Assembly: GCF_006345805.1 (NCBI RefSeq)
Contig: NW_021832580.1
Coordinates: 2,144-66,143, forward strand
Direction of reading: 5' to 3'
DNA: 64,000 bases
Origin: Octopus sinensis
Taxonomy: Eukaryota
Part shown: positions 560-63,696 of the stretch, piece by piece
Layout of the letters: every line of letters starts with the position of its first letter
How positions within the stretch are numbered: position 1 is the stretch's first letter
Notes under the pieces: model-generated
The model's input: only the letters and a program-made list of their open reading frames with translations
Databases searched by the model: none
Told to the model about the DNA's origin: nothing
Translations under genes and position numbers: made by a program

Positions 560-928
560 ATATATATATATATATAAAAATATATATATATATATACACG
601 CACGCAAATTATATTCAGAAAGTAGCTTTAATGTACTTTATTAACTGCAAAACTAGTCAAAATGATGAATTTTTGCAGTTAATAAATTATGTTTAAAGGC
701 ACTTCTCGATTTTCTGAAGTTTAATTTGAATATTTATGAACCAAGATTTATACTTAAACTTATTATTTTAGGAATATTACAATTCATTAAAAAATAATAG
801 TCAACGAACCAGTAATTCATTAGTTATTTTTTATCTCTTAATCAGGCTATTTTAATCTCTATTTGAATTATATATATAAATGTATATATATATATAAATA
901 TTTATATACATATTCATATATATAATTA

Positions 929-1092
929 AGAGTGGCTGTGTGGTAAGTAGCTTGCTTACCAACCACATGTTTCCCGGGTTCAGTCCCACAGCGAGGCACC
1001 TTGGGGCAAGTGTCATCTGCTATAGACTTGTGAGTGGATTTGGTAGACGGAAACTGAAAGAAGCTCGTCGTATATATGTATATATATATACA

Positions 1093-1139
<47 letters not shown>

Positions 1140-1336
1140 TTGTCTCCCCCAACATCGCTTGACAACCGATGGTGGTGTGTTTACGTACTCGTAACTTAGC
1201 GGTTCGGCAAAAGAAAACGATAGAATAATTACTAGGCTGCCAAAGAATATGTCCTGGGGTCGATTTGTTCGACTAAAGGCGGTGCTTCAGCATGGCCGCA
1301 TGACTGAAACAAGTAGAAGAGTAAAAGAGAGTAAGA

Positions 1337-6519: not shown

Positions 6520-6559
<40 letters not shown>

Positions 6560-6561
<2 letters not shown>

Positions 6562-6950
6562 CGTAGGAGTGGCTATGTGGTAAGTAGCTTGCTTACGAAC
6601 CACATGGTTCCGGGTTCAGTTCCACTGCGTGGCACCTGGGCAAAGTATCTTCTACTATAGCCTCGAGCCCTGTGAATGGATTTGGTAGACGGAAACTGAA
6701 AGAAGCCCTTCATATATATATATATATGTTGTTATTTGTGTCTATGTTTGTCCCACCACCACCACCACCATCGCTTGACAACTGATGATGGTATGCTAAC
6801 TTCCCCGTAACTTAGCGTTTCGGCAAAAAGAGACGGATAGAATAAGTACTAGGCTTACAAAGAATAAGTCCCGGCGTTGATTTGTTCGACTAATGGCAGT
6901 GCTCCAGCATGGCCGCAGTCAAATGACTGAAGCAAGTAAAATAATAAAAG
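6560..6950 (+). mobile_element. CORE-like SINE family A
   Basis: Full head-core-microsatellite-tail structure. Confidence 0.85.
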
Positions 6951-12450: not shown

Positions 12451-12859
12451 TTACTCTTTTCTCTTACTTGTTTCAGTCATTCCACCCTGCGGCCATGCTG
12501 GAGCACCGCCTTTAGTCGATCAAATCGCCCCGGGACCTTATTCTTTGTGTAAGCCCTACTTAGTTTATCGGTCCCTTTGGTGCCGACCCGAAGTGAGGCG
12601 GGGGGACGTAACACCACAGCATCGGTTGTCAAGCAATGCTAGGGGGACAACACAGACACACAAACACACACATACATATAATATATATACACTATACGAC
12701 GACATGCTTCTTCATTTTTCGTCGTCTACCAAATCCACTCACAAGGCTTTGGTCAGCCCGACTATAGTATAGAAGACACTTGCCCAAGGTGTCCGCAGTG
12801 GGACTGACCCGCAACCATGTGGTTGGTAAGCAAGCTACTTACCACACAGCCACTCCTGC
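12451..12859 (-). mobile_element. CORE-like SINE family A
   Basis: Reverse complement of the full structure. Confidence 0.85.
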
Positions 12860-16972: not shown

Positions 16973-17458
16973 GAACAAAACGTACAGGATAACACTTCCA
17001 AGCATAGGCAGCAAGTGGACAGAATCGTAAACGTGGCCTTGTGCCTATAATAAGAATAGTTATTGGCTTCAAATTTTGGCAAATGGCCGGCAATTTTAGG
17101 GGCGGGGGCTAAGTCGATAACATCGACCCCAGTACACAACTGGTATTTATTTTATCGACACCGAAATGGATGAAAAGCAAAGTCGACCTCGGTGGAATTT
17201 GAACACAAAACGTGACGGACGAAACGTCGCAAAGGATTTTGCCCGGCATGCTAACGTTTCTGCCAGCTCACCGCCTTAACGCATAACTAATAATGGTTCT
17301 AAATTTTGGCGCAAAGCCAGCAATTTCGAGGTGAGGGGGGAATCGATTACACTGATCCCAGTGCACAGCTGGTGCTTATTTTATCGATATCGAAATGATG
17401 AAGGGCGAAGTCGACCTCGGCGAACCTCACTAACTAAAAATAATTTTATACCAAAATA

Positions 17459-17661
17459 GGCGTAGGAGTGGCTGTGTGGTAAGTAGCTTGCTTGCCAATC
17501 ACATGGTTCCGGGTCCAGTCCTACTGCGTTGCACCTTGGGCAAGTGTCTTCTACTAGAGCCTTGGACCGACCAAAGCCTTGTGAGTGGATTTGGTGGATG
17601 GAAACTGAAAGAATCCCGTCATGTATATATATATATATATGTTTGTGTGTGTGTGTGTGTA

Positions 17662-17701
<40 letters not shown>

Positions 17702-17905
17702 CTTGTGTGTCTGTGTTTGTCCCCCCACCATCGTTTGACAACCGGTGCTGGTGTATTTACGTCCTCGTGACTTGGCGGTTCGGCAAAAGAGACCGATAGA
17801 ATAAGTACTAGACTTACAAAGAATAAGTCCTGGGGCGATTTGCTCGACTAGAGGCGGTGCTCCAGCATGGCCGCAATCAAATGACTGAAACAAATAACAG
17901 AAAAG

Positions 17906-17989: not shown

Positions 17990-18275
17990 GAGAGAGAGAA
18001 AGTTATTTTATTCCACAGGGGTATAAATATAGAAAAGAGAAGTTGAAAATGCACTTGGATTCGTTTAGATTTTTAAATTTGTAAAGACTTTACCGGTTTC
18101 AAAGATTTCTCTGATGTTCACAATTTGAGATAGAAAGACGTGGACATACTGACATATGTGCAAAATATAAGGTTCCAAAATTCCAAGCCTTTCCACTTTG
18201 CCTTTGTTCAGTCAATACTACAGACGAAGCACAGATGAACGAAGAAAATATATTCATAAAATATATAAACCAGGA

Positions 18276-18709
18276 GGCGCAGGAGTGGCTGTGTGGTAAG
18301 TAGCTTGCTTACCAACCACTTGATCATGGGTTCAGTCCACTGCGTGGAATCTTGGGCAAGTGTCTTCTACTATAGCCTCGGGCCGCCAATGCCTTGTGAG
18401 TGGATTTGGTAGACGAAAACTGAAAGAAGCCTGTCGTATATATGTATATATATATATATGTGTGTGTGGTGTGTGTGGTGTGTGTGTGTGTGTGGTGTGT
18501 ATCATTGTGTGTCTGTGTTTGTCCCGCCAACATCGGTTGACAACCGAATGCTGGTGTGTTTACGTCCCCGTAACTTAGCGGTTCGACAAAAGAGACCGAT
18601 AGAATAAGTACTGGTCTTACAAAGAATAAGTGCTAGGTCGATTTGCTCGACTAGAGGCGGTGCTCCAGCATGGCCGCAGTCAAATGACTGAAACAAGTAA
18701 AAGAGTAAA
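18276..18709 (+). mobile_element. CORE-like SINE family A
   Basis: Full structure. Confidence 0.85.
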
Positions 18710-18855: not shown

Positions 18856-19245
18856 CTCTTTTCTCTTATTTTTTCTCTTTTCACTTGTTTCAGTCATTTG
18901 ACTGCGGCCATGCTGGAGCACCGCCTTTTAATTGAGCAACTCGACCCCGGGACTTATTCTTTGTAAGCCCAGTACTTATTCTATCCGCCTCTTTTGCCGA
19001 ACCGCTAGATTTCGGGGACGTAAACACCACCAGCATCAGTTGTCAAGCAATGCTAGGGGGACAAACACAGACACACAAACACACATACATACATCTTTCA
19101 GTTTCCGTCTACAAAATCCACTCACAAGGCATTGGTCGGCCCGGCGCTATAGTAGAAGACACTTGCCCAAGGTGCCACGCAGTGGGACTGAACCCAGAAC
19201 CATGTGGTTGGTTAGCAAGCTACTTACCACACAGCTACTCCTGCG
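18856..19245 (-). mobile_element. CORE-like SINE family A
   Basis: Reverse complement of the full structure; head-to-head with the next copy. Confidence 0.85.
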
Positions 19246-19250
19246 TACAA

Positions 19251-19860
19251 GGCGTAGGAGTGGCTGTGTGGTAAGTAGCTTGCTTACCACCACATGGTTC
19301 CGGGTTCAGTCCCACTGCGTGGCACCTTAGGCAAGTGTCTTCTACTATAGCCTCGGGCCGACCAAGGCCTTGTGAGTGGAAACTGAAAGAAGCCCGTCGT
19401 ATATATGTATATGTATATATATATATATGTGTGTGTTTGTGCCCCCAACATCGCTTTACAACAGATGCTGGGTGTGTTTACGTCCCTGTAACTTAGCGGT
19501 TCGGCAAACCTCATGGTTCCGGGTTCAGTCCCACTGCGTGACACCTTGGGCACGTGTCTTCTACTATAGTCTCGGGCCGACCAAAGCCTTGTGAATGGAA
19601 ACTGAAAGAAGCCCGTCGTATAAATGTATATGTGTGTATATATATATATATGTGTGTGTGTATGTGTGTCTGTGTTAGTGCCCCCAACATCGCTTGATAA
19701 CAGATGCTGGGTGTGTTTACGTCCTCGTAACTTAGCGGTTCGGCAAAAGAGAACGATAGAATAAGTACTAGGCTTACAAAGCATGAGTCCTGGGGTCGAT
19801 TTGCTCGACTAAAGGCGGTGCCCCAGCATGGTTGCAGTCAAATGAGTGAAAAATTAAAAG
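19251..19860 (+). mobile_element. CORE-like SINE family A with internal tandem duplication
   Basis: The sequence restarts at CATGGTTCCGGG (~19514). Both halves share loss of the ATTTGGTAGACGG segment. Confidence 0.8.
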
Positions 19861-20865
19861 GAGATTAAAGAGGTGCAGACTATCTATTCAACCACCGGGC
19901 TTCATAAACACAATTCCTGTCGACTCTACCACTTGACAGATTAAATTTAGAGAGCTTTGATTGTTTGTGACTGTCACTAGACGTGTTCATTCAACCGTGT
20001 CAGCCTTAAATTTTCGGTGCAAAAAGAATAGTCACATGATGTTAACACACGGATATGGTGATGAACCGACAAAAGTTTCTGTGGCTAATCACGTGATCAT
20101 CCCTACCACACTTGAAAGATTAAAATCAGACAACTTTGATTGTTAGGAGTGTCACTAGATATGTTCATTCAACCGTGACGGCTTTGATTTATAGCGCCAA
20201 TAAAGAACGGATGTAACGGGAATCTTACAAAGATTTCTAAATCTAATCATGTGATCATTCTCGGCCAATCAAATCGTATCCAAAACAGATACTAATGTGA
20301 AGAAACAAGAGAATTTTTGAGCTCCAAAGAGCAACAAGATATCTTTTAATACCATCTTTTGAAAATCAGAGCAGAGAAGTCTGTGAAACCGGTTAAGTAT
20401 TTAAAAATCTAAAAATAGAAAATTTAATACCAGTGCATTTTCAACACTCACACACATATACATACATGAAGAAACACGTGGCTAGTAGTTAGGGCTGTTG
20501 CACTCGTGATCGTAAGATGGTAGTTTCGACTCCTGTATCGGGCGCTGCCTTGCGTTGTATCCTTGAGCAAGACACTTCATTTTTCTTTGCTCCATTTCAC
20601 TCAGCTGACAAAAACGAGTAATTTTGTGATGGACTGGTGTCCCGTCCAGGTGGGGAATATAAAAGCCACACGATCAGGGAAACGGGCCTTATGAAACTAT
20701 GACCCGAACTACGTTAAGGGCAGACGTGTCTGTGGAGTACTCAACCACTTACACGTTAATTTCACGAGCAGGCTGTCCCGTTAATCCTATCAACTGTAAC
20801 ACGTGGAACACTCGTCGCAACCGACGGAGTACCATTCGTTCTTCTTGTTCCTATGTGTCATACTC

Positions 20866-21074
20866 TTTACTCTCTGTTACTCTTTTACTTGTTTCAGTCA
20901 TTTAACTGTGGCCATGCTGGAGCACCGCCTTTGGTCGAGCAAATCGACCCCAGGACTTATTCTTTGTAAGCCCATTACTTATTATTTTGCCGAACCGCTA
21001 AGTTACGGGGACGTAAACACACCAGCATCGGTTGTCAAGCGATGTTGGGGGGACAAACACAAACGCACAAAGAT

Positions 21075-21105
<31 letters not shown>

Positions 21106-21270
21106 CACGACGGGCTTCTTTCAGTTTCCGTCTACCAAATCCACTCACAAGGCTTTGGTCGGCCCAAGGCTATAGCAGAAGACACATGCCCAAGGTGCCA
21201 CGCAGTGGGACTGAACCCGAAACCATGTGGTTGGTAAGCAAGCTACTTACCACACAGCCACTCCTGCGCC
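20866..21270 (-). mobile_element. CORE-like SINE family A
   Basis: Reverse complement of the full structure. Confidence 0.85.
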
Positions 21271-21894
21271 TGTCATGTGGACGATCAATGATTTACGTAG
21301 AGTGTGTAGGAATTACCAAAAGAGCATTCTAGAAGCAATATTTTTCTCGTAGATATGAAGCTAATTCACGCTCGTTGTCTTGTACTTCTGCTAAGAAATA
21401 GGTTTCTGTTAATGCATTCATGAGAGTATGTTTGTGTGTTGGCTAAAAGCTTTTACGAAGAAAATCTTGTTTCGATTAATTTCATTCAAAATTGCTCAGA
21501 CACTCCAAAGGATTTACGAAATGGTATTTGTGCGTGTGTGGTGCAAGTTATGATCTAAACTGCCGTGGGCTATAAAGCAGAGTTTGTGTTTATTTCCGCA
21601 AACGGGATTTCACATGATGTCTGCGGGACTTTTGTCATTACCTTCTGTCGGACCCGCGTTCTACTAAAGACACAAGGCCAAATTTGTGGGAGGGAGATAG
21701 TCGATTACATTAACCCCAGTATTCAACTGGTACTTATTTCATCGACCCTGAAAGGATAAAAGGCAAAGTCAGCCACGGCGAAATTTGAACTCTGAACCTG
21801 AAGCGGAAGAAATGCCGTTTAGCATTTTGCTCGGCGTGTTAGCGATTCAGCCAGCTCGCCGCCTACAGGGCTTTTTGTATAATACATAAGGTTT

Positions 21895-23411: not shown

Positions 23412-24745
23412 GGTATGACAGTGTTGAAGGTGTATTTGAAAGTGTATCTTGGGTACTGGATTTGCAAACTCCCTCTCAATGGTCTTCAGATGCCCTCTTT
23501 CTCTTGTATTTTTCTAGCCACATTGGTGTCCAAAGGGCAGCTGATTTCCTCAACAGATCATATCTTTTCTTTGTGGTCCCACACAACACACTCTAGTCCA
23601 TTGTGTTTCAACTTGGTTGCTGTTTTAATTTTCAAATTCCACCCGTACTCTTTTGAACCATCTGTCTTGGTGTATTCGACTTAGTCTGTAGCTGTTTTCT
23701 TTTTTGCTACCACGGCACCATGCCTCGCAGAAAGGCATGCCTGGAAGACATTCTCTCGCTGCTGGCAATAATATGGTTAGTATCTTCAATCTTGGTCTTG
23801 CACAGCCTACATTTTTTGTCTCTCTTTCTCTCTTACTTGTTTCAGTCATTTGACTGCGGCCATGCTGGAGCACCACCTTTTAGTCAAGCAAATCGACCCC
23901 AGGACTTATTCTTTGTAAGCCTAGTACTTATTCTATCGGTCTCTTTGGCCGAACCAGCATCGGTTGTCAAGCGATGTTCGGGGACAAACAGAGACACACA
24001 AACACACACACATATATATATATACGACGGGCTTCTTTCAGTTTCCGTCTACCAAAGCCACTCACAAGGCTTTGGTCGGCCCGAGGCTATAGTAGAAGAC
24101 ACTTGCCCAAGATGCCACGCAGTGGGACTGAACCCGGAACCATGTGGTTGGTAAACAAGCTACTTACCACACAGCCACTCCTGCGCCTGTCAATGTTTTC
24201 TGCCTTTGATGTTGTAGGTACTTGGTGGTGGTGGTCGTGGTGGGGTGTATTGTTTTTGAATTGCAAGGAAGTAGCCTTCAAAGTGGGATGGCATAAATTT
24301 GTCGGTACCTATGCCAAACCTTTGATGTAAACAATCGCTTCTATGGTTTGTGTTTTTCGTGCCAAGTACCCATGTACTATCTGCTCGGTGAAATGGTCAG
24401 TTTTTTTTTTAAATTTTGTTCTTCAGATAAACAAATTTTACCAATGATCTTTGGGGAGAGATCTGTATCAGCTCTTATTTCATATCTCTCCTCAAGTTAA
24501 TTAGCTGTTCCAATTATGTTATTGATTTCACGTTCACAAACTTAGGCCAGATAATTACTGGCCACTTTCCTATGCCACAGATGTTTCAGTGTCACAGTAC
24601 GGGTTTCATCAATACAGATTTAAGAGCACGGCCTCCATCGATGTAGAAGCTTCCTGTAATACTGATCACCTTGCGAATTCGAACATCTATCTCACACTGA
24701 GATCTTGTAATGTCTATGATTTTCCTTTGAGCTTTGTTTAAGTTT
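23412..24745 (-). pseudogene. Degenerate R4/Dong-like RLE non-LTR retrotransposon (thumb, CCHC knuckle, restriction-like endonuclease), split by a SINE
   Basis: The minus strand gives EIDVRIRKVISITG..GGRALKSV, SHFEGYFLAIQ, DKKCRLCKTKIEDTNHII and WNLKIKTATKLKHN...VVWDHKEK..SVEEISCPLDTNVARKIQEK, with stops and frameshifts. These motifs are typical of R4-clade ORFs. Confidence 0.75.
23822..24187 (-). mobile_element. CORE-like SINE family A inserted in the R4 relic
   Basis: Reverse complement of the full structure with a small internal deletion. Confidence 0.85.
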
Positions 24746-24817: not shown

Positions 24818-25237
24818 CTCTTTTACTCTTTACTCTTTTACTTGTTTAAGTCATTTGACTGCGGCCATGCTGGAGCACCGCCTTTAGTCGAGCGAATCGA
24901 CCCCAGGTCTTATTCTTTGTAAGCCTAGCACTTATTCTATCGATGTCTTCTGCCGAACCGCTAAGTAATGAGGACACCAACATCGGTTGTCAAGCGATAT
25001 TGGGGGGGGGGGGACAAACACAGACATACAAACATATACGCACACATACACTCATATATATATACATATATACGACGGGCTTCTTTCAGTTTCCGTCTAC
25101 CAATCCACTCACAAGGCTTTGGTCGGCCCGAGGCTATAGTAGAAGACACTTGCCCAAGGTACCACGCAGTGGGACTGTACCCGGAACCATGTGGTTGGTA
25201 AACAAGCTACTTACCACACAGCGCACTTCTGCGCCTT
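24818..25237 (-). mobile_element. CORE-like SINE family A
   Basis: Reverse complement of the full structure. Confidence 0.85.
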
Positions 25238-25253
25238 ATATATATATATATAG

Positions 25254-25519: not shown

Positions 25520-26465
25520 AATCTTAGATAAACTTAGATATGTTTTCGACTAAAGATTGGTCCAGGCCATGTCTAACTAATAGCACCACCTGATAGGATT
25601 ATCTAAATCCTGTTTAAGTCAAGTTTTGTTTATGGTCCATTCAAGTAGTGAGTTTTTTTTTGTTGGGTGAATTGTATCCAATTATGGGGGCTTATCTGGT
25701 ATTCCTTGAAGGAATCTATCCAGACTCCGTTTAAAGTTGATGGGATCCTTTTCCTCTTTGATCTCTTTCGGGACAATGTTAAATAGGGCAGGGCCTGTTG
25801 AGGAAAAGAAATTATGTTGCAGTGTACATGTATGCTGTGATCTTGAATTGGGCAGGGGACGTATGGCCCGTGGTCCCAGTCTTGGATGAACCTTGAAGCT
25901 AATGTTCAGGTCGTTTGGGCAAAGTTGGCAGTATATTCTCCACATCGTACAAATGATGTACCGCTCACGGCGGCGCTGGAGAGAGTAGAGTTTCAAGGCT
26001 TTAAGGCGGTCCCAATAATCGAGAGCAGCCATGCCTTCAATTCGTTTAGTGAGTACTCTCTGGATGTTTTGTCTTGTATGGGGAGACCACAGTGGGCAGC
26101 AGTATTCGAGGTGTGGCCGTACAAAGGAGAAAAGTGGTATGATGACACCTTGTTCTCTGGACTGGAAGGTTCTTAAGATCCAGGAGTTCATCCTACGAGC
26201 TATATCGACCTTATTGTTGATGTGGGCATCCAACTGAGATTGTCATCAACAATTACGCCCAGGTCTGATATTGTTAGAGGCTGTGAGCAGTTCACCTGAA
26301 GGAAGAGAGTCTGGCTGTTTTAGTGTGGACTTTCTTCCAAAATGCATCAGCTCAAATTTTCCCTCGTTCAGTTGCATTTTGTTTCTGTCTGCCCATTGAC
26401 TCACAGCATATATATCAGACTGGAGTTGAATATAGACAAAAAGGAAAACTATAATTGTCATTAAA
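25520..26465 (-). pseudogene. 5'-truncated CR1/L2-group LINE (RT end + C-terminal region + 3' UTR)
   Basis: LQSDIYAVSQWADRNKMQLNEGKFELMHFG, then after a frameshift FVRPHLEYCCPLWSP...YWDRLKALKLYSLQRRRERY...GPALFNIVP...FKRSLDRFL. The 3' end is GGTGGTGC...CATGGCC-hairpin-GAAAAC plus (TTTATCTAAG)-type repeats. Confidence 0.9.
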
Positions 26466-33300: not shown

Positions 33301-33680
33301 ACCGGCGAAAGAGACTTTAAACATTAATACTGATTATACACCCAACTGGATATATATTTACATACATCTATATACACTACACACATGTATACTTGTATAT
33401 ATACACCTATATTGATTGATTGAAACCTTGGATAGGTCTGCCATGTGTGTATATATGCATGTATCTACACATGTATACTTTAACTACACGTAAATTAATA
33501 GATTAATAGGATATGTCTGCGTATATGTATATATACGCATCTCTCTTATATTAACAGTTGCTTATATGTATATACACAGATATATATAGATATATTATAT
33601 ATCAGAAAATTTATATATACACCACACAATATATACAAATACAGATATAAACAGTTTTTTTAAATATAAAACCAGGCAAC

Positions 33681-34850
33681 ATGACAGAGAACACCGCAAA
33701 AGATTTGATACTGGACATTATCGGTCGTTTGCGAAGCCGCAAAGCCCGACCTGATTTCGAAAATATTTGCCACATGGCCTCGCGGAAACATGGATTAAGT
33801 TTGAAAGAAACGGAGGAGATGATGAGCAAGCTGGTGCAGGAGAATATTGTCATCAGAGTCACTTACAAAGGAAGGACGAGCTACAGAAATGCGGCCAAGT
33901 GCTCCAAGACCCGAATGCACGCCGAACTTTTGAACAAGAAAGCAGCAACGAAACTGCGGTTTGCCATTCAATCGCGCTGTTCACTGAACAACAATAATAA
34001 CAGTAATAGCAACAACAACAGCATTAGTAAGTGTGAAAAACACAGAGGTGTTAATAATAATAATAATAACACTAATAATAATAATAATAACTGTACAAAT
34101 AGTACTTGTGATAACAATTCCGTGAATGACTGTGTCCTTTCTTCTAATGCCGCTACTACGAACCAAAGTGGAGCCGGTTCGTGTGACAGTAAAACTTGTA
34201 GCCACTCTGCTCAAAAATCCAGGTCGAATTATCAGGATCCTAGTGTAGCCACCATTACCAATAATAATAATAATAATTGCACGGCGACCCAGGTACTTAC
34301 TGATGAATGCAACGGTGGTGGTGTTGATGATGATAGTGGTGATGTAGGTGTCAGTCGCGAACAGATCGAACTGTGGTGGCATGCACAAGGTTTCGAATCG
34401 GCTCTGGCGAAGATTGATTTAAACACGGTCATCCAAAACGAATTAATTGCTAAAAATATCCAGCTTTTACCGAACGGAAAGTTGGCGTTGACCAACAGTG
34501 GATCTACTACGACTGCCAATTCGGCCCTTTTAAATACCGCATCTCTTTCATCTTTGGTACCATTCTCTTCAGATTCCTTGCCGACAACAAATTCTTCGTC
34601 TTTTGTCCCCTGTTCGACTCCCGACACATCCACTGTGTCCCTTTCTTGCCAAGCACCCCTTTCACATGCAGCAGCAGTAGCAGCAGCAGCAGCAACAGAC
34701 ACGAGCCCTTCCGATAAACAGAAGGCTGATCTGGATAGGAATGGTATCTGTGGAAGCGGTGGGACAGGTGACACAAGCCGTCATCCTGTCAGTAAGAACT
34801 GTCTCCCCAAACCACCCTGTAAAAGAGGACGTCCTGTCTCAAGACGAAAG
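33681..34850 (+). CDS. First coding exon of a SAMD1-like winged-helix chromatin protein (WH1 aa ~6-73; probable H15-like WH2 aa ~84-271 split by an Asn-rich insert; KRGRP motif aa 381-385)
   Basis: The 408-aa ORF is the only long ORF here not explained by microsatellites or TEs. Its N-terminus LILDIIGRLRSRKARPDFENICHMASRKHG...LVQENIVIRVTYKGRTSYRNAAK closely resembles the human SAMD1 WH as I recall it (ILDTIDSLRSRKARPDLERICRMVRRRHG...LRVSYKGSISYRNAAR). A phase-0 donor AAG|GTAAAA lies at 34850/34851, after which the sequence decays into CA/TA repeats. Orthology is not established, so no symbol is given. Confidence 0.85.
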
Positions 34851-35143
34851 GTAAAAAATTCAAAGAGGCAATCTATTTTTATTGACATGCCACATTCACT
34901 CCATTAACACACACGCAGTAATACATAAATACACACATTCGCCAATATACAAGCACCAACACATACATTTATACGCATGCATACACACACATGGTCACAC
35001 TCGCGCGCGCGCATATTCCCGTACACACATTACTTTCATTTTCTTGTATTATAAATTTTTTATTTATATTTTATCCGTTAACATTTCCTGTCTTTATAAA
35101 TTAATTAAATTTACACGTTTAACTAAAAACACAAATAATCAAT

Positions 35144-45324: not shown

Positions 45325-45729
45325 CTCTTACTCTTTACTTGTTTCTGTCATTTGGCTGCGGCCATGCTGGAGCACCGCCTTTAGTCAAGCAAATCGACCC
45401 CGGGACTTATTCTTTGTAAGCCCAGTACTTATTCTATCGGTCTCTTTTGCCGAACCGCTAAGTGACGGGGATGTAAACACACCAGCATCGGTTGTCAAGC
45501 AATGCTAGGGGGACAAACACACAAACATACACACAAATACATATATATATATATATACATATATACGACAGGCTTCTTTCAGTTTCCGTCTACCAAATCC
45601 ACTCACAAGGCTTTTGGTTGGCCCGAGGCTATAGCAGAAGACACTTGCCCAAGATGCCACACAGTGGGACTGAACCCTGAACCATGTGGTTGGTAAGCAA
45701 ACTACTTACCACGCAGCCACTCCTGCGCC
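45325..45729 (-). mobile_element. CORE-like SINE family A
   Basis: Reverse complement of the full structure. Confidence 0.85.
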
Positions 45730-45956
45730 TGTATGTGTATGTGTGAGTATCTGTGCATATGTAATGTGTTTCTTTTCTTGACACTGCATGTTTATTGCAA
45801 ACAAATGTAAACTACATTATTTACATTCGACGGATATTTGTCCTCATCTTGTTTGTTGTTAACACAGTGTTTCAGCTGATATACCCTCCAAGCTTTCTTC
45901 GGGTGACTTGGGGGAAATTTCGAACCTAGGTTCTCATTCCTAAGGTATTTTTCAAT

Positions 45957-46361
45957 ACTCTTTTACTCTTTTACTTGTTTCAGTCATTTGACTGTGGCCA
46001 TGCTGGACCACCGCCTTTAATCGAGCAACTCGACCCCAGGACTTATTCTTTCGTAAGCCCAGTATTTTTTCTATCGGTCTCTTTTTGCCGAACCGCTAAG
46101 TAACGGGGACATAAACACACCAGCATCGGTTGTCAAGCAATGCTAGGGGGACAAACACACACACACAAACACACACACGCATATATATATATATACATAT
46201 ATATACGACGGGCTTCTTTCAGTTTCCGTCTACCAAATCCACTCACAAGGCATTGGTCGGCCCGGGGCTATAGCAGAAGACACTTGGCCAAGATGCCACA
46301 TAGTGGGACTGAACCCAGAACCATGTGGCTGGTTAACAAGCTACTTACCACACAGCCACTC
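45957..46361 (-). mobile_element. CORE-like SINE family A nested in the Penelope relic
   Basis: Reverse complement of the full structure. Confidence 0.85.
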
Positions 46362-53214: not shown

Positions 53215-53760
53215 GTTAGTTTGTTAGTTAATTTTTTGGCTCAAAAAGCAAAAAGCAAGGCCATGTACTTCCCGAATGTACAGGGTGGTGTTCATGTAAA
53301 GAATTCAGGCCACTTGTGGTCAAGGGAGACTTTGAACCGAGCGGTCGTCGGCATCTTCACCATCTCGTCCGGCAGCTTATTCCACGGATCCGCAACCCGG
53401 ACGGAGAAAGCCCCTCTCCTTCGATTGAGATGAAATCGTCGCAGATAGAGCTTTTCGGAATGACCCCGTAGCCGACGCTCTGGAGCAGGAGTGAAGAACA
53501 GCTCTTTCGAGAGGTTATACTTTCCGCTTATGATGTTGTGAGCAAGAATGAGATCACCACGGCATCGTCGTTTTTCTAGAGAATAAAGGTCGAGCGTCTT
53601 CAGCCTTTTTTCATAAGACAAATTCTTCAGACCAAGAACCATGCGGGTAGCCAGCTTCTGGACTCTTTCGAGATGCTGTATGTCTTTGAGGAGATAAGGA
53701 GAAGAGGCTTGAATCCCGTACTCCAATATGGGTCTCACCAGTGTAAACAGTATAGCGCAA
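53215..53760 (-). pseudogene. 5'-truncated CR1 LINE 3' end
   Basis: LVRPILEYGIQASSPY...LERVQKLATRMV.GLKNLSYEKRLKTLDLYSLEKRRCRGDLI...RGHSEKL...FSVRVADPWNKLP...FKVSLD*, followed by a short 3' UTR and a (TAAC)-like tail. Confidence 0.9.
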
Positions 53761-53974
53761 TACGGCGGTGCATCAGCATGGCCGCAGCTCTGAGCTGAAA
53801 CTTTATAAAAAAGAAAACATTTAATTATTATTTACTCTAAACAAGTTGTAAATGAGTCCCCGATACAGTATCGTTCAACACACCTGCTCGATGTTCCTAC
53901 ACCTGTCTTCATCTTTTGTCTTTCTGTAAATTTCAACTCTGTGTGTTTGTGTGTGTGTAAGACAGGGCGTAAAT

Positions 53975-54186
53975 AATACTCTTTTACTTGTTTCAGTCAT
54001 TCGACTGCGGCCATGCTGGAGCACCGCCTTTAGTCGAGCAAATCGACCCCAGGACTTATTCTTTGTAAGCCTAGTTAGTACTTATTCTATCGGTCTCTTT
54101 TGCCGAACCGCTAAGTTGCGAGGACATAAATACACCAGCATCAGTTTTGAAGCGATGTGGGTGCGGGGACAAACACAGACATAACA

Positions 54187-54236
<50 letters not shown>

Positions 54237-54398
54237 GACAGGCTTCTTTCAGTTTCCGTCTACCAAATCTACTCACAAGGTTTTGGTCGGCCTGAGGCTA
54301 TAGTAGAAGACATTTGCCCAAGGTGCCACGCAGTGGGACTGAACCAGGAACCATGTGGTTTGTAAGCAAGCTACTTACCACACAGCCACTCCTACGCC
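53975..54398 (-). mobile_element. CORE-like SINE family A
   Basis: Reverse complement of the full structure. Confidence 0.85.
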
Positions 54399-54789
54399 TA
54401 TATAGGTCATTATATACTTTTTCTTTATTGTAATAAACTTGACTTACAACCGTTTCCAGTAGTCATTACAGGTTCATTATTTATAAGTTGAGTTCCGCCG
54501 AGGTTGATCAGTTCTGGACTGTAGTAGAAGAGATACTTGCCCAAGGTGCTATACTTTGAGTCCGTACCCTGTAACTAAGTGGTTGGAAAGTAAGGTTCTT
54601 GACCACACAACCAATATCTTTGTGCGTGTGCGTGAGTGTATATTCTTTTACTTGTTTCAGTCATGTGACCGTGGCCATTCTGGAACACTGCCTTAAAGGG
54701 TTTTTTTAGTTGAAGAAATTGACCCAAAGACTTATGGTGGGTGGCCAAACACAAAGACATACACACACACAACACATATATATATATTA

Positions 54790-55160: not shown

Positions 55161-55374
55161 TTACTCTTTTTTACTCTTCTACTTGTTTCAGTCATTTGAC
55201 TGCGGCCATGCTGGAGCACCACCTTTAATCGAGCAACTCGACCCCAGGACTTATTCTTTTGTAAGCCCAGTACTTATTCTATCGGTCTCTTTTGCCGAAC
55301 TGCTAAGTAACGGGGACATAAACACACCAGCATCGGTTGTCAAGCAATGCTAAGGGGACAAACCAGACACACAA

Positions 55375-55413
<39 letters not shown>

Positions 55414-55602
55414 ATATATATATATATATATACTATATACGACAGGCTTCTTTCAGTTTCTGTCTACCAAATCCACTCACAAGGCATTGGTTGGGCCGGG
55501 ACTATAGCAGAAGACACTTGCCCAAGATGCCACGCAGTGGGACTGAACCCGGAACCATGTGGTTGGTTAGCAAGCTACTTACCACACAGCCACTCCTGCG
55601 CC
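55161..55602 (-). mobile_element. CORE-like SINE family A
   Basis: Reverse complement of the full structure. Confidence 0.85.
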
Positions 55603-56519
55603 TTATTATTATTTTATTTTTTATATTTCTATTATATGTAATTTTCTAGATGGTGTAATTTAATTGTTCATTTTGAATTGATAAAAGGTGGTTTTTTTCT
55701 AATCTTTATATATATGATGGGCTTCTTTCAGTTCCTTTCTTCTAGATCTACTCACCAGGCTTTGGTCAGCCCAAAGCTATTGTAGAAGACACTTACCCCA
55801 GGTGCCACACAGTGGGACTGAACCCTGAACCATGTAGCTGAGAAGCAAGCTTCTTACCACACAACCATGACTGCACCTATCTATCTATATATGTGTGTGT
55901 GTGTGTGTTGAAGCTAGCACCTGCAGAGGGCTAATTGGACCTGTAGCCCAAAACTAAATACGTCCATAATGACTGTATGCCCTGGTGGAGTTTGATCAGA
56001 GGTTAAGGATGGATGAGAATTAATTCTGTAATGCAATCATTCTATTGTTCCAGTCCCAAGCTGAATTCCAACTGTTGGCCAATTTGTCCCAAAGTTCTTA
56101 TCACAACTTAAAATTAATGAAGTGAATGTCATCTATCTTCCCAACCTGATTTTTGATATCATCTGACAAACACTGACCAAGATGGCATGAACCAGCCAAG
56201 CTTTACCTGCTAGAAATAGCAACCCAAATGCTTTTAAATCAGGTCCCAATGCTGGGTATTCGAGAGCCAAATGATGGCAGAGTTTCAATCCCGGGATCAT
56301 CCTGATTCCAAAAAGGTAGAATATGTCTATACAGAGCAAATGTAGACCGAGATACAGGGAACCCAAACACACAGACAGACAGAATTTCACTTTTATTATT
56401 ATAGATATATATATAATCATCTTTTAATGTCCCTCTTCTATGCTGGTGTGAGTTAGAGTTTGACAGATTCCAACAGGTTCTAGGTCTGAATGGTTCAGCT
56501 TGGTTTCTTATTTCATTAC

Positions 56520-63142: not shown

Positions 63143-63353
63143 TTTTACTCTTTTACTCTTTTACTTGTTTCAAGTCATTTGACTGCGGCCATGCTGGAGC
63201 AACGCCTTTAGTCGAGCAAATCGACCCCGGGACTTATTCTTTGTAAGCCCAGTACTTATTCTATCTTTTGCCGAACCGCTAGGTGACGGGGACGTAAACA
63301 CAACAGCATCGGTTGTCAAGCAATGCTAGGGAGACAAACACAGACACACAAGC

Positions 63354-63408
<55 letters not shown>

Positions 63409-63579
63409 CATATATACGACAGGCTTCTTTCAGTTTCCGTCTACCAAATCCACTCACAAGGCATTGGTCGACCCGGGGCTATAGCAGAAGACACTTGCCC
63501 AAGATGCCACGCAGTGGGACTGAACCTGGAACCATGTGGTTAGTTAGCAAGCTACTTACCTCACAGCCACTCCTGCACC
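63143..63579 (-). mobile_element. CORE-like SINE family A
   Basis: Reverse complement of the full structure. Confidence 0.85.
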
Positions 63580-63696
63580 TATCTGTTCTCATTATTGATT
63601 ACCTTGCCATAAATTGTCGTTATCCCATTTTTGAAATCAGTCCACTTAAATCGCATTTCTAAAATCAGTCCACAAAAATCGCACGCACGCACTCAA

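What the first reader, a model, noticed from the sequence alone, without database searches (positions are those of the whole stretch)
33681..34850. Invertebrate SAMD1-type CpG-reader with a KAT6-like tandem winged-helix architecture
Seen: WH1 has the SAMD1-type LRSRKARPD and YKG..SYRNAA motifs rather than the KAT6-type KQKQRPSEERI. It retains the RK and YK residue pairs that, as I recall, contact unmethylated CpG. A second H15-like pattern follows (helix KKAATKLRFAIQS; GVSREQIELWWHAQ; IDLNTVIQNELIAKNIQLLPNGKLAL), then KRGRP. Established: vertebrate SAMD1 has one WH plus a SAM domain, while KAT6A/B have WH1+WH2. Inference: this may be an ancestral or lineage-specific hybrid architecture. The C-terminal domains (SAM, MBT or other) lie in exons not visible here.
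Basis: partly seen in the sequence, partly recalled or inferred. Interest (0 to 1): 0.7.

Follow-up and report, generated by a model that had tools for sequence, protein, structure and literature searches.

The report
Mollusc SAMD1/Lint-O-type chromatin reader exon
This is the first coding exon of an invertebrate (probably cephalopod) relative of the human CpG-island reader SAMD1, belonging to a widespread but inconsistently named family that joins a KAT6-like reader head to a SAMD1-like tail; it is a real gene of modest interest, not a new kind of protein.

Summary
Window 33681-34850 (+) is one intact coding exon, from the first ATG to a canonical AAG|gtaaaa donor. It encodes three elements. 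(1) A SAMD1-type winged helix (Pfam 86 bits; 54% identical to human SAMD1 versus 33% to KAT6A; modelled 0.9 A from PDB 6LUI) that keeps all seven published DNA-contact residues. (2) A second, linker-histone-like winged helix split by a 123-residue asparagine-rich insert. (3) A conserved KRGRP AT-hook-like motif.

The tandem winged-helix layout is real. It is not lineage-specific: about 158 cluster representatives share it, and full-length relatives continue into a KAT6-like double PHD finger and a SAMD1-like SAM domain, with no MYST domain. One member is named after fly Lint-O.

The premise that vertebrate SAMD1 has only one winged helix is incomplete. Its Pfam "small helical domain" corresponds to this second module.

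The H15 assignment for the window's own copy is indirect, because it gets no Pfam hit itself. The module is not basic, so DNA binding by it is doubtful. The PHD and SAM exons are not in the window, and expression in this species is untested.

Verdict: a new member of a known kind. The side insight is that SAMD1 and Lint-O look like counterparts.

The parts
33681..34850 (+). First coding exon (390 codons) of a SAMD1/Lint-O-type gene. It runs from the first ATG after an in-frame TAA (33648-33650) to the splice donor.
   Evidence: tblastn and blastn with related full-length proteins and transcripts align only here and stop at 34850; the abalone orthologue's exon 1 has the same content
33696..33890 (+). 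WH1: SAMD1-type winged helix (aa 6-70), the predicted reader of unmethylated CpG
   Evidence: Pfam PF21524 86.2 bits; PDB 6LUI 1.7e-17; AF2 pLDDT >90 with Foldseek 6LUI rmsd 0.9 A, TM 0.89
33729..33755 (+). LRSRKARPD: end of helix alpha1 plus the following loop. R18, R20, K21 and R23 correspond to human SAMD1 R43, R45, K46 and R48 (major-groove CpG and backbone contacts).
   Evidence: alignment; contacts from PMC8115922; invariant in 65 relatives
33864..33890 (+). YKGRTSYRN beta-hairpin wing. Y62, K63 and R69 correspond to human Y87, K88 and R94 (minor-groove and backbone contacts).
33927..33977 (+). WH2 helix 1 (LLNKKAATKLRFAIQSR, aa 83-99), net charge +5 over aa 84-99
   Evidence: aligned with helix 1 of the module in all relatives; AF2 helix with block-mean pLDDT 81-95; charge
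33978..34346 (+). 123-aa low-complexity insert (35 Asn, 18 Ser) in the helix1-helix2 loop of WH2, predicted disordered and built partly from AAT/AAC-type trinucleotide arrays
   Evidence: no plausible in-frame intron found
34347..34490 (+). WH2 helices 2-3 and the beta-hairpin wing (aa 223-270): the rest of the linker-histone-like (H15 / SAMD1 'SHD') module
   Evidence: AF2 H226-235, H247-256, E260-262, E268-270 with block-mean pLDDT 85-94; 29.6 bits against a profile from other lineages versus 10.4 for the best shuffle; family-level H15 evidence
34491..34805 (+). Ser/Thr/Ala-rich disordered linker (aa 271-375), including a GCA (poly-Ala) array at 34668-34698
34806..34850 (+). Basic tail PKPPCKRGRPVSRRK with an AT-hook-like core KRGRP (34821-34835), at the exon end
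   Evidence: R384 and P385 are invariant, and K381, R382 and G383 are kept in at least 90% of 21 relatives; Pfam AT_hook is only sub-threshold in a relative (13.3 vs 17.4 bits) and not reported for the window
34851..34856 (+). Splice donor gtaaaa, starting an intron of more than 29 kb (no later exon in the window)
   Evidence: the abalone intron 1 is about 21 kb

Best explanation
The exon is the 5' coding exon of the orthologue, in a mollusc (probably a cephalopod; that part is inference), of a bilaterian chromatin-reader family. The family's full architecture is WH1 (SAMD1-type) - WH2 (linker-histone-like) - AT-hook - double PHD finger - SAM.

Likely mechanism:
- WH1 docks on unmethylated CpG. 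The end of helix 1 (R20/K21) enters the major groove and the Y62/K63 hairpin enters the adjacent minor groove, as in human SAMD1. The residues and fold are shown; the binding is inferred.
- The KRGRP motif adds minor-groove or backbone affinity (inferred from the motif).
- WH2 has an H15-type fold, but it is non-basic and in this lineage it is interrupted by a disordered Asn-rich loop. It is more likely a structural, regulatory or protein-contact module than an H1-like nucleosome-dyad binder (inferred).
- The downstream DPF and SAM, seen only in relatives, would read the histone H3 tail. They would also polymerise or bind the SAM of an L(3)mbt/L3MBTL-type protein to repress targets, as shown for fly Lint-O and human SAMD1.

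Vertebrate SAMD1 looks like the same gene family after loss of the DPF, with WH2 surviving as the 'small helical domain'.
For: Exon integrity and boundaries.

WH1 identity, fold and contact residues.

Family architecture. In the census of 109 WH2-profile hits, 96 have SAMD1_WH, 29 PHD, 24 SAM_1 and 22 Linker_histone, and no MYST family is listed.

Closest full-length relative, P0001: its DPF is most like KAT6A's (1.2e-30) and its SAM most like SAMD1's (4.4e-15). It is encoded uninterrupted on 2.6-3.2 kb contigs and indexed in 113 blocks of the collection, which indicates a spliced mRNA.

WH2 is H15-like: Pfam Linker_histone is above its cutoff in P0004, P0005 and P0010. In Foldseek of the module model, most of the top hits including the first five are H1/H5 globular domains, with TM 0.59-0.65 (query) and 0.63-0.75 (target). 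The exhaustive profile search reaches a 4xH15 protein.

The window's copy belongs to that module.

SHD link: hhalign E 4.2e-5. P0085 passes the SAMD1_SHD cutoff and also scores 75.8 bits with the WH2 profile.

Conserved exon 1 content and long intron in abalone.

Function of relatives: Lint-O binds L(3)mbt through its SAM (PMC9535798); SAMD1 binds CpG and L3MBTL3 (PMC8115922).
Against: No transcript or later exon of this species was seen, so the PHD and SAM exons and expression are inferred from relatives at about 66% identity.

The window's own WH2 and that of P0001 give no Pfam Linker_histone or SHD hit, even with the insert skipped.

Foldseek E-values for the module are only about 1e-2, and that model is of the abalone copy.

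The PDB sequence-profile search gave only HP1BP3 at E 0.038.

The WH2 core has net charge -1. Deleting the central region of human SAMD1 did not reduce chromatin binding (PMC11969672). A DNA-binding role for WH2 is therefore doubtful.

The link to Drosophila Lint-O rests on a RefSeq name for a weevil protein, not on a direct comparison with CG2662.

No invertebrate KAT6 sequence was available for the WH1 tree.
Confidence: 0.8

Rival explanations
1. It is simply the first exon of the species' ordinary KAT6 (MOZ/MORF/Enok) acetyltransferase gene, as NCBI's 'KAT6B-like' names for relatives suggest.
For: Several relatives are named 'histone acetyltransferase KAT6B(-like)'. The WH1-WH2-DPF order matches the KAT6 N-terminus (PMC9881136). 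The relatives' DPF matches the KAT6A DPF best.
Against: WH1 is 54% identical to human SAMD1 but 33% to KAT6A. Complete relatives are 460-590 aa and end in a SAM domain most like SAMD1's. No MYST family is listed for the relatives scanned individually, and none is among the families matched by the 109 profile hits.
Confidence: 0.03
2. The second module is only a generic small helical domain. Its linker-histone likeness is superficial, so the protein has one true winged helix and not a KAT6-like tandem.
For: The window's copy has no Pfam H15 or SHD hit. Only 3 of 19 and 22 of 109 family members reach Linker_histone. Foldseek E-values are about 1e-2. The module is non-basic. Pfam's curators called the vertebrate version a 'small helical domain'.
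Against: Three relatives exceed the curated Linker_histone cutoff. Most of the top Foldseek hits, including the first five, are H1/H5 globular domains, with about 80 aligned columns and TM up to 0.75. The models show three helices plus a beta-hairpin. The profile reaches a 4xH15 protein. The position between a SAMD1-type WH1 and a DPF mirrors KAT6.
Confidence: 0.12
3. The ORF is a decaying or unexpressed relic such as a pseudogene, or the Asn-rich stretch is partly intronic so that the true protein is shorter.
For: No expression data exist for this species. The exact ORF is not on record in public assemblies, and no same-species protein was found. The insert is twice as long as in the nearest relatives. 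The surroundings are dense with repeats.
Against: The 390-codon frame is intact. Every invariant family residue is kept. The donor sits exactly where transcript homology ends. No in-frame GT..AG candidate with a reasonable donor and pyrimidine tract lies inside the insert. Transcripts of relatives keep an Asn-rich loop at the same place.
Confidence: 0.05

Closest known systems
Vertebrate SAMD1 (Atherin): WH - disordered region with 'small helical domain' - SAM
   Same: WH1 is of the same type: 54% identity, all seven DNA-contact residues kept, and 0.9 A rmsd to 6LUI. The second module aligns with SAMD1_SHD. The relatives' SAM domain is most similar to the SAMD1 SAM.
   Different: Relatives carry a double PHD finger and a conserved KRGRP motif that the Pfam scan of the fish SAMD1 used here does not show. 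The spacer between WH1 and the second module is about 12 aa here versus about 250 aa in fish SAMD1. The mammalian Pro/Ala-rich region is absent, and an Asn-rich loop sits inside WH2 instead.
Drosophila Lint-O (CG2662) and its insect relatives: L(3)mbt co-repressor, described as 2xPHD + SAM
   Same: A weevil family member is named Lint-O by RefSeq and has WH1, the second module, KRGRP, 2xPHD and SAM in the same order. The expected partner logic, SAM-SAM binding to an MBT protein, parallels SAMD1-L3MBTL3.
   Different: The Lint-O paper reports no winged helix and proposes SAMD13 as the human counterpart (PMC9535798). I could not compare the fly protein itself. Insect WH1s are more diverged (43% identity to the window).
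KAT6A/KAT6B/Enok N-terminal reader cassette (WH1 - WH2/H15 - DPF)
   Same: The same order of three reader modules. WH1 belongs to the same Pfam family (7Y43, 7e-7). WH2 is H15-like in both (PMC9881136, PMC9908889). The relatives' DPF matches KAT6A best (1.2e-30).
   Different: There is no MYST catalytic domain, and a SAM domain takes its place. WH1 carries RSRKARPD rather than KKQKQRPSE. WH2 here is not basic and is split by an insert, so the cooperative nucleosome binding shown for MORF WH1-WH2 cannot be assumed.
Linker histone H1/H5 globular domain (Pfam PF00538)
   Same: Three helices plus a beta-hairpin. These are the top structural matches for the module (TM 0.63-0.75 normalised to the target). 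Pfam hits are above the cutoff in some relatives.
   Different: The core has net charge -1 instead of being strongly basic. There are no lysine-rich tails. The window's copy is too diverged for a direct Pfam hit.

Membership tests
SAMD1-type winged helix (Pfam PF21524, SAMD1_WH) | Profile match above the curated cutoff | tested here: met
   86.2 bits versus a cutoff of 24.5, covering aa 9-70 and profile positions 2-63 of 63
SAMD1-type winged helix (Pfam PF21524, SAMD1_WH) | Atypical WH fold: three helices plus a two-stranded hairpin | tested here: met
   The AF2 model has H6-19, H26-37, H41-53, E57-62 and E65-70 at pLDDT >90. Foldseek gives 6LUI at rmsd 0.9 A and TM 0.89.
SAMD1-type winged helix (Pfam PF21524, SAMD1_WH) | DNA-contact residues R43, R45, K46, R48, Y87, K88 and R94 of human SAMD1 | tested here: met
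   Window R18, R20, K21, R23, Y62, K63 and R69. R18, R20, K21, R23, K63 and R69 are invariant and Y62 is kept in at least 90% of 65 relatives.
SAMD1-type winged helix (Pfam PF21524, SAMD1_WH) | Selective binding of unmethylated CpG DNA | not testable with these tools
   Needs EMSA or ITC with methylated and unmethylated probes
Invertebrate WH1-WH2-AT hook-DPF-SAM family (Lint-O-like; 'KAT6B-like' in RefSeq) | N-terminal exon with WH1, the second module and KRGRP in this order | tested here: met
   Alignments A1 and A3; profile score; same exon content in abalone
Invertebrate WH1-WH2-AT hook-DPF-SAM family (Lint-O-like; 'KAT6B-like' in RefSeq) | Double PHD finger and C-terminal SAM domain in the same protein | tested here: inconclusive
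   No such exons lie in 34851-64000. They are present in the closest full-length relatives P0001 and P0002. A transcript from this species is needed.
Invertebrate WH1-WH2-AT hook-DPF-SAM family (Lint-O-like; 'KAT6B-like' in RefSeq) | SAM-mediated binding to an L(3)mbt-type MBT protein | not testable with these tools
   Shown for fly Lint-O (PMC9535798) and human SAMD1 (PMC8115922) only
KAT6 / MYST acetyltransferases (MOZ, MORF, Enok) | MYST catalytic domain (Pfam MOZ_SAS) | tested here: not met
   It is absent from every complete relative scanned individually and from the families matched by the 109 profile hits. It cannot be tested on the window's own missing exons.
KAT6 / MYST acetyltransferases (MOZ, MORF, Enok) | KAT6-type WH1 (closer to KAT6 than to SAMD1) | tested here: not met
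   31.7 bits and 33% identity to KAT6A, versus 66.6 bits and 54% to SAMD1
Linker-histone H15 fold (Pfam PF00538), for the second module | Profile match above the curated cutoff | tested here: not met
   The window's copy gives no hit, with or without the insert. Relatives P0004, P0005 and P0010 score 26.4, 23.5 and 29.0 bits against a cutoff of 22.4, and 22 of 109 family members hit at E<=1e-3.
Linker-histone H15 fold (Pfam PF00538), for the second module | Three-helix plus beta-hairpin fold that superposes on GH1/GH5 | tested here: inconclusive
   The abalone-copy model's top hits are H1.0, H5 and H1.4 at TM up to 0.75, but with E about 1e-2. The window's own model has the right elements at block-mean pLDDT 81-95. 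Its split topology could not be superposed with the tools available.
Vertebrate SAMD1 (orthology) | WH + SHD + SAM without PHD fingers | tested here: not met
   Relatives have a DPF between the AT-hook and SAM. WH1, the SHD-like module and the SAM are shared. This is therefore a sister or ancestral architecture, not the vertebrate form.
AT-hook (Pfam PF02178) | RGRP core flanked by basic residues | tested here: inconclusive
   The motif PKPPCKRGRPVSRRK is present and conserved. Pfam AT_hook scores only 13.3 vs 17.4 bits in P0004 and is not reported for the window.

The most novel reading that the evidence does not exclude
The WH1-WH2(H15)-AT hook-DPF-SAM protein is the ancestral bilaterian form of SAMD1 and the true counterpart of fly Lint-O. 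On this reading, human SAMD1 rather than SAMD13 is the Lint-O orthologue. The unexplained 'central structured region' of human SAMD1 is a relic linker-histone-type winged helix. The KAT6 reader cassette (WH1-WH2-DPF) and this family descend from a single duplicated three-module unit that acquired either a MYST or a SAM tail. The papers searchable here do not state any of this.
Probability: 0.55. Interest if true: 0.55.

Novelty: new member of a known kind. Interest (0 to 1): 0.4.

Why it matters
The exon itself is an ordinary orthologue, but the family it belongs to ties together three lines of work that the papers I could search treat separately.

1. It suggests an answer to the question left open in the Lint-O paper about which human protein corresponds to Lint-O. 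SAMD1 is the candidate. It shares the winged helix and the SAM, and it binds L3MBTL3 as Lint-O binds L(3)mbt.

2. It gives the "central region" of human SAMD1, described in 2025 as of unknown relevance, a concrete identity to test: a degenerate H15 winged helix.

3. It shows that the KAT6 CpG/nucleosome/histone reader head exists in animals attached to a repressive SAM tail.

It also flags a systematic annotation problem, since members of one family are named KAT6B, polyhomeotic, Atherin, Lint-O and "Supporter of activation of yellow". In a cephalopod with sparse DNA methylation, a conserved reader of unmethylated CpG is a reasonable entry point for studying promoter recognition.

Tried and rejected
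- tblastn of four full-length relatives against the window found no PHD or SAM exon in 34851-64000 or upstream. One 24-bit hit at 24009-24113(-) is noise.
- A homology search with the clean N-terminal 100 aa collected only 3 candidates and added nothing.
- An exact look-up of the 408-aa ORF in public assemblies found nothing on record. The species and the rest of the gene could not be recovered.
- The PDB sequence-profile search with the WH2 module gave only HP1BP3 at E 0.038, plus engrailed homeodomain hits driven by a 'GL.E.QI..WF'-like helix. I judged the homeodomain hits to be chance. The same motif explains the 8x homeodomain protein. The bacterial Ig-repeat protein there looks like a summed-repeat artefact.
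- Foldseek with the whole-exon model reports only WH1 matches, because the 123-aa insert splits WH2.
- Pfam on the window's WH2 with the insert computationally skipped gave no hit.
- A scan for in-frame introns inside the insert found none with a plausible donor and pyrimidine tract.
- There are no Rfam families, no tRNAs, and no Pfam hits for five other long ORFs in the window.
- I did not type KAT6 WH2 or H5 sequences from memory for a direct comparison. The KAT6 WH2 likeness therefore rests on the papers and on the shared Pfam family.
Full report
**1. What is in the sequence**

Window 33681-34907(+) is a 408-codon ORF. The real coding unit is 33681-34850. 33681 is the first ATG after an in-frame TAA at 33648-33650, and 34850|34851 reads AAG|GTAAAA, a canonical donor. 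Nucleotide alignment to a related species' spliced transcript (L002-L005) runs at 70% identity over the first domain. It resumes at 79% identity and stops exactly at 34850. It is the only long, high-complexity ORF in a window otherwise filled with microsatellites and more than 20 copies of a ~350-bp SINE-like repeat. No Rfam family, tRNA or other Pfam domain was found elsewhere.

**2. First domain (WH1)**

Residues 9-70 match Pfam SAMD1_WH at 86.2 bits against a cutoff of 24.5. Against PDB sequences, the best hit is the human SAMD1 winged helix (6LUI, 1.7e-17, 66.6 bits). KAT6A WH1 follows (7Y43, 7e-7, 31.7 bits), then ZMYND11 (0.78). Over the 63-residue core, the window is 54% identical to human SAMD1, 33% to KAT6A and 27% to ZMYND11. 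A rough NJ tree puts the window, its invertebrate relatives and vertebrate SAMD1 together, apart from KAT6A and ZMYND11. That tree has only one KAT6 sequence and no invertebrate KAT6.

The AlphaFold model has WH1 at pLDDT above 90, and Foldseek superposes it on 6LUI at 0.9 A with TM 0.89. The published DNA contacts of human SAMD1 are R45/K46 (major groove, CpG), Y87/K88 (minor groove) and R43, R48 and R94 (backbone) (PMC8115922). They correspond to window R20/K21, Y62/K63, R18, R23 and R69. All are kept, and all are invariant or nearly so in 65 relatives. The observation about WH1 is confirmed in full. CpG binding itself is inferred.

**3. Second module (WH2)**

The alignment of relatives shows a conserved module directly after WH1: helix 1 (LNS..AS..I..A...L), a variable loop, GVS...IE.W, then L..A.QREV.AG.L..L.NGNY.L.

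In the window, helix 1 is aa 83-99 and the rest is aa 223-270. Between them lies a 123-residue loop with 35 Asn and 18 Ser, partly encoded by AAT/AAC-type arrays. The two closest relatives have a ~60-residue Asn-rich loop at the same place, and other lineages have 10-45 residues.

The window's model gives helix 71-108, disorder from about 110 to 222, then H226-235, H247-256, E260-262 and E268-270 at block-mean pLDDT 85-94.

The window's copy scores 29.6 bits (36.9 with the loop skipped) against a profile built without any cephalopod-like row. The best of 2000 shuffles scores 10.4. It is therefore a true member of the module.

**4. Is the module H15-like?**

Evidence for:
- Pfam Linker_histone exceeds its cutoff of 22.4 bits in three relatives: P0010 at 29.0, P0004 at 26.4 and P0005 at 23.5.
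- 22 of 109 profile hits reach Linker_histone at E<=1e-3.
- A model of the compact abalone copy (pLDDT 78) returns mostly H1.0, H5 and H1.4 globular domains among the top Foldseek matches, including the first five. About 80 columns align, with TM 0.59-0.65 (query) and 0.63-0.75 (target).
- The exhaustive profile search reaches a protein with four Pfam H15 domains at E 4.4e-7.

Evidence against, or limits:
- The Foldseek E-values are only about 1e-2.
- Only 3 of 19 module segments hit H15 when scanned alone.
- The PDB profile search gave just HP1BP3 at E 0.038.
- The window's own copy and that of P0001 give no Pfam hit, even with the loop skipped.

My reading is that the fold is H15-type at the family level, and that the window's copy is a diverged, split instance of it.

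**5. Link to vertebrate SAMD1**

Fish SAMD1 (P0042) carries Pfam SAMD1_SHD ("small helical domain", 112.7 bits) between WH and SAM. Three results connect it to this module:
- The same Pfam model weakly overlaps the H15 hit in abalone.
- hhalign of the module profile against the fish SHD aligns helices 2-3 and the wing at E 4.2e-5 with probability 70%.
- One representative (P0085) scores 75.8 bits with the module profile and also passes the SHD cutoff (27.3 vs 27).

The 2025 SAMD1 paper describes this central part only as putatively structured and of unknown relevance. It reports that deleting it had minimal effect on the reporter assay and increased chromatin binding in ChIP (PMC11969672).

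**6. Rest of the protein**

The exon ends in PKPPCKRGRPVSRRK. R384 and P385 are invariant, and K381, R382 and G383 are kept in at least 90% of 21 relatives. Pfam AT_hook is sub-threshold, so I call this motif AT-hook-like.

No later exon is in the window. Complete relatives of 460-590 aa continue with two PHD fingers and a SAM domain. In the closest relative, P0001, the PHD pair matches the KAT6A double PHD finger best (1.2e-30), ahead of KAT6B, DPF2, DPF3 and PHF10. Its SAM matches the SAMD1 SAM best (4.4e-15), ahead of PHC3 and L3MBTL3.

P0001 is encoded uninterrupted on 2.6-3.2 kb contigs and is indexed in 113 blocks of the collection, which indicates a spliced, expressed mRNA. In the abalone genome, exon 1 likewise holds WH1, WH2 and the AT-hook (aa 1-200) and is followed by a ~21 kb intron. 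The missing exons here are therefore expected to lie beyond the window. No MYST family is listed for the relatives scanned individually or among the families matched by the 109 profile hits.

**7. What it is**

It is the first coding exon of a mollusc member of a bilaterian family with the order WH1, WH2, AT-hook, DPF, SAM. The named nearest relatives are molluscs and a brachiopod. A cephalopod source is my inference from the repeat landscape and the shared Asn-rich loop.

Public names for the family disagree: KAT6B(-like), Lint-O, polyhomeotic-proximal, Supporter of activation of yellow, Atherin and SAMD1-like WH protein.

Fly Lint-O (CG2662) is an L(3)mbt co-repressor that binds through its SAM. 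It was described with only 2xPHD + SAM, with SAMD13 proposed as the human counterpart (PMC9535798). CG2662 also turned up among SAM-domain proteins recovered in a fly variant-Polycomb (Sfmbt) pull-down study (bioRxiv 10.1101/2022.04.29.490092). No paper searchable here links Lint-O to SAMD1 or to a winged helix. The link between this family and fly Lint-O rests on a RefSeq name for a weevil protein. I could not compare CG2662 itself.

**8. Mechanism**

Shown:
- The residues and fold of WH1.
- The conserved module order.
- The H15-type fold at family level.

Inferred:
- WH1 reads unmethylated CpG as SAMD1 does.
- KRGRP adds minor-groove affinity.
- The DPF reads the H3 tail.
- The SAM polymerises and recruits an MBT protein for repression.

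For WH2, I lean against an H1-like or MORF-like nucleosome-dyad role. The H2-H3-wing core carries net charge -1 in the window, with a range of -6 to +6 and mostly negative values across lineages. The human central-region deletion did not weaken chromatin binding. In the cephalopod-like members helix 1 is basic (+3 to +5), so some DNA contact is not excluded.

**9. Novelty and score**

The exon is a new member of a known kind, since the family is already in databases and its domains are in Pfam. The lineage-specific feature is the long Asn-rich loop inside WH2.

The broader reading is plausible (about 0.55) and would interest specialists in this area, but it is a family-level inference and not a property of this window. 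That reading is that SAMD1 is the DPF-less vertebrate form of this family and the counterpart of Lint-O, that the SAMD1 central region is a relic H15 domain, and that the KAT6 reader head shares its origin.

Interest: 0.4.

Noticed in passing
window 927-1295, 6559-6941, 12461-12857, 17458-17900, 18275-18703, 18874-19900, 20882-21271, 23830-24188, 24826-25240, 45334-45730, 45958-46361, 53981-54399, 55176-55604, 63148-63580 and others: More than 20 copies, on both strands, of a ~350-bp SINE-like dispersed repeat. They are 74-88% identical to the copy at 19201-19900, and some are arranged head-to-head or in tandem. ARAGORN finds no tRNA-like head and Rfam finds nothing.
   Followed up: partly
window 33978-34346: The Asn-rich insert inside the second winged helix is about twice as long here (123 aa) as in the two nearest relatives (~60 aa). 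It is partly made of AAT/AAC trinucleotide arrays, which points to expansion by replication slippage inside a structured domain's loop.
   Followed up: partly
window 34347-34490 and alignment A2: The H2-H3-wing core of the H15-like module is neutral to acidic in most lineages (window -1; range -6 to +6). That is unlike basic H1 globular domains, which argues for a non-DNA role or a changed binding surface.
   Followed up: partly
relatives P0005, P0049, P0050, P0056, P0059/P0223, P0063: Members of this one family are named KAT6B(-like), Supporter of activation of yellow, polyhomeotic-proximal chromatin protein, Atherin, Lint-O or SAMD1-like WH protein in public databases. This is a systematic annotation inconsistency.
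   Followed up: yes
window 25685-26242(-) and 53295-53831(-): Two ORFs of about 180 aa share motifs such as '..RP.LEY....WSP...' that reminded me of retrotransposon ORF2 tails. Neither gives a Pfam hit at E<=0.01, so their nature is unresolved.
   Followed up: partly
whole window: CpG observed/expected is 0.87 at 38.6% GC, with no CpG-island-like peak at the exon or just upstream. If WH1 reads unmethylated CpG in this genome, its targets are not classical vertebrate-style islands.
   Followed up: no
The full-ORF homology search scored only the 8000 candidates sharing the most words with the query, and the poly-Asn stretch may have filled that list. The clean 100-aa query collected just 3 candidates. 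The absence of a same-species protein in these searches is therefore weak evidence.
   Followed up: partly
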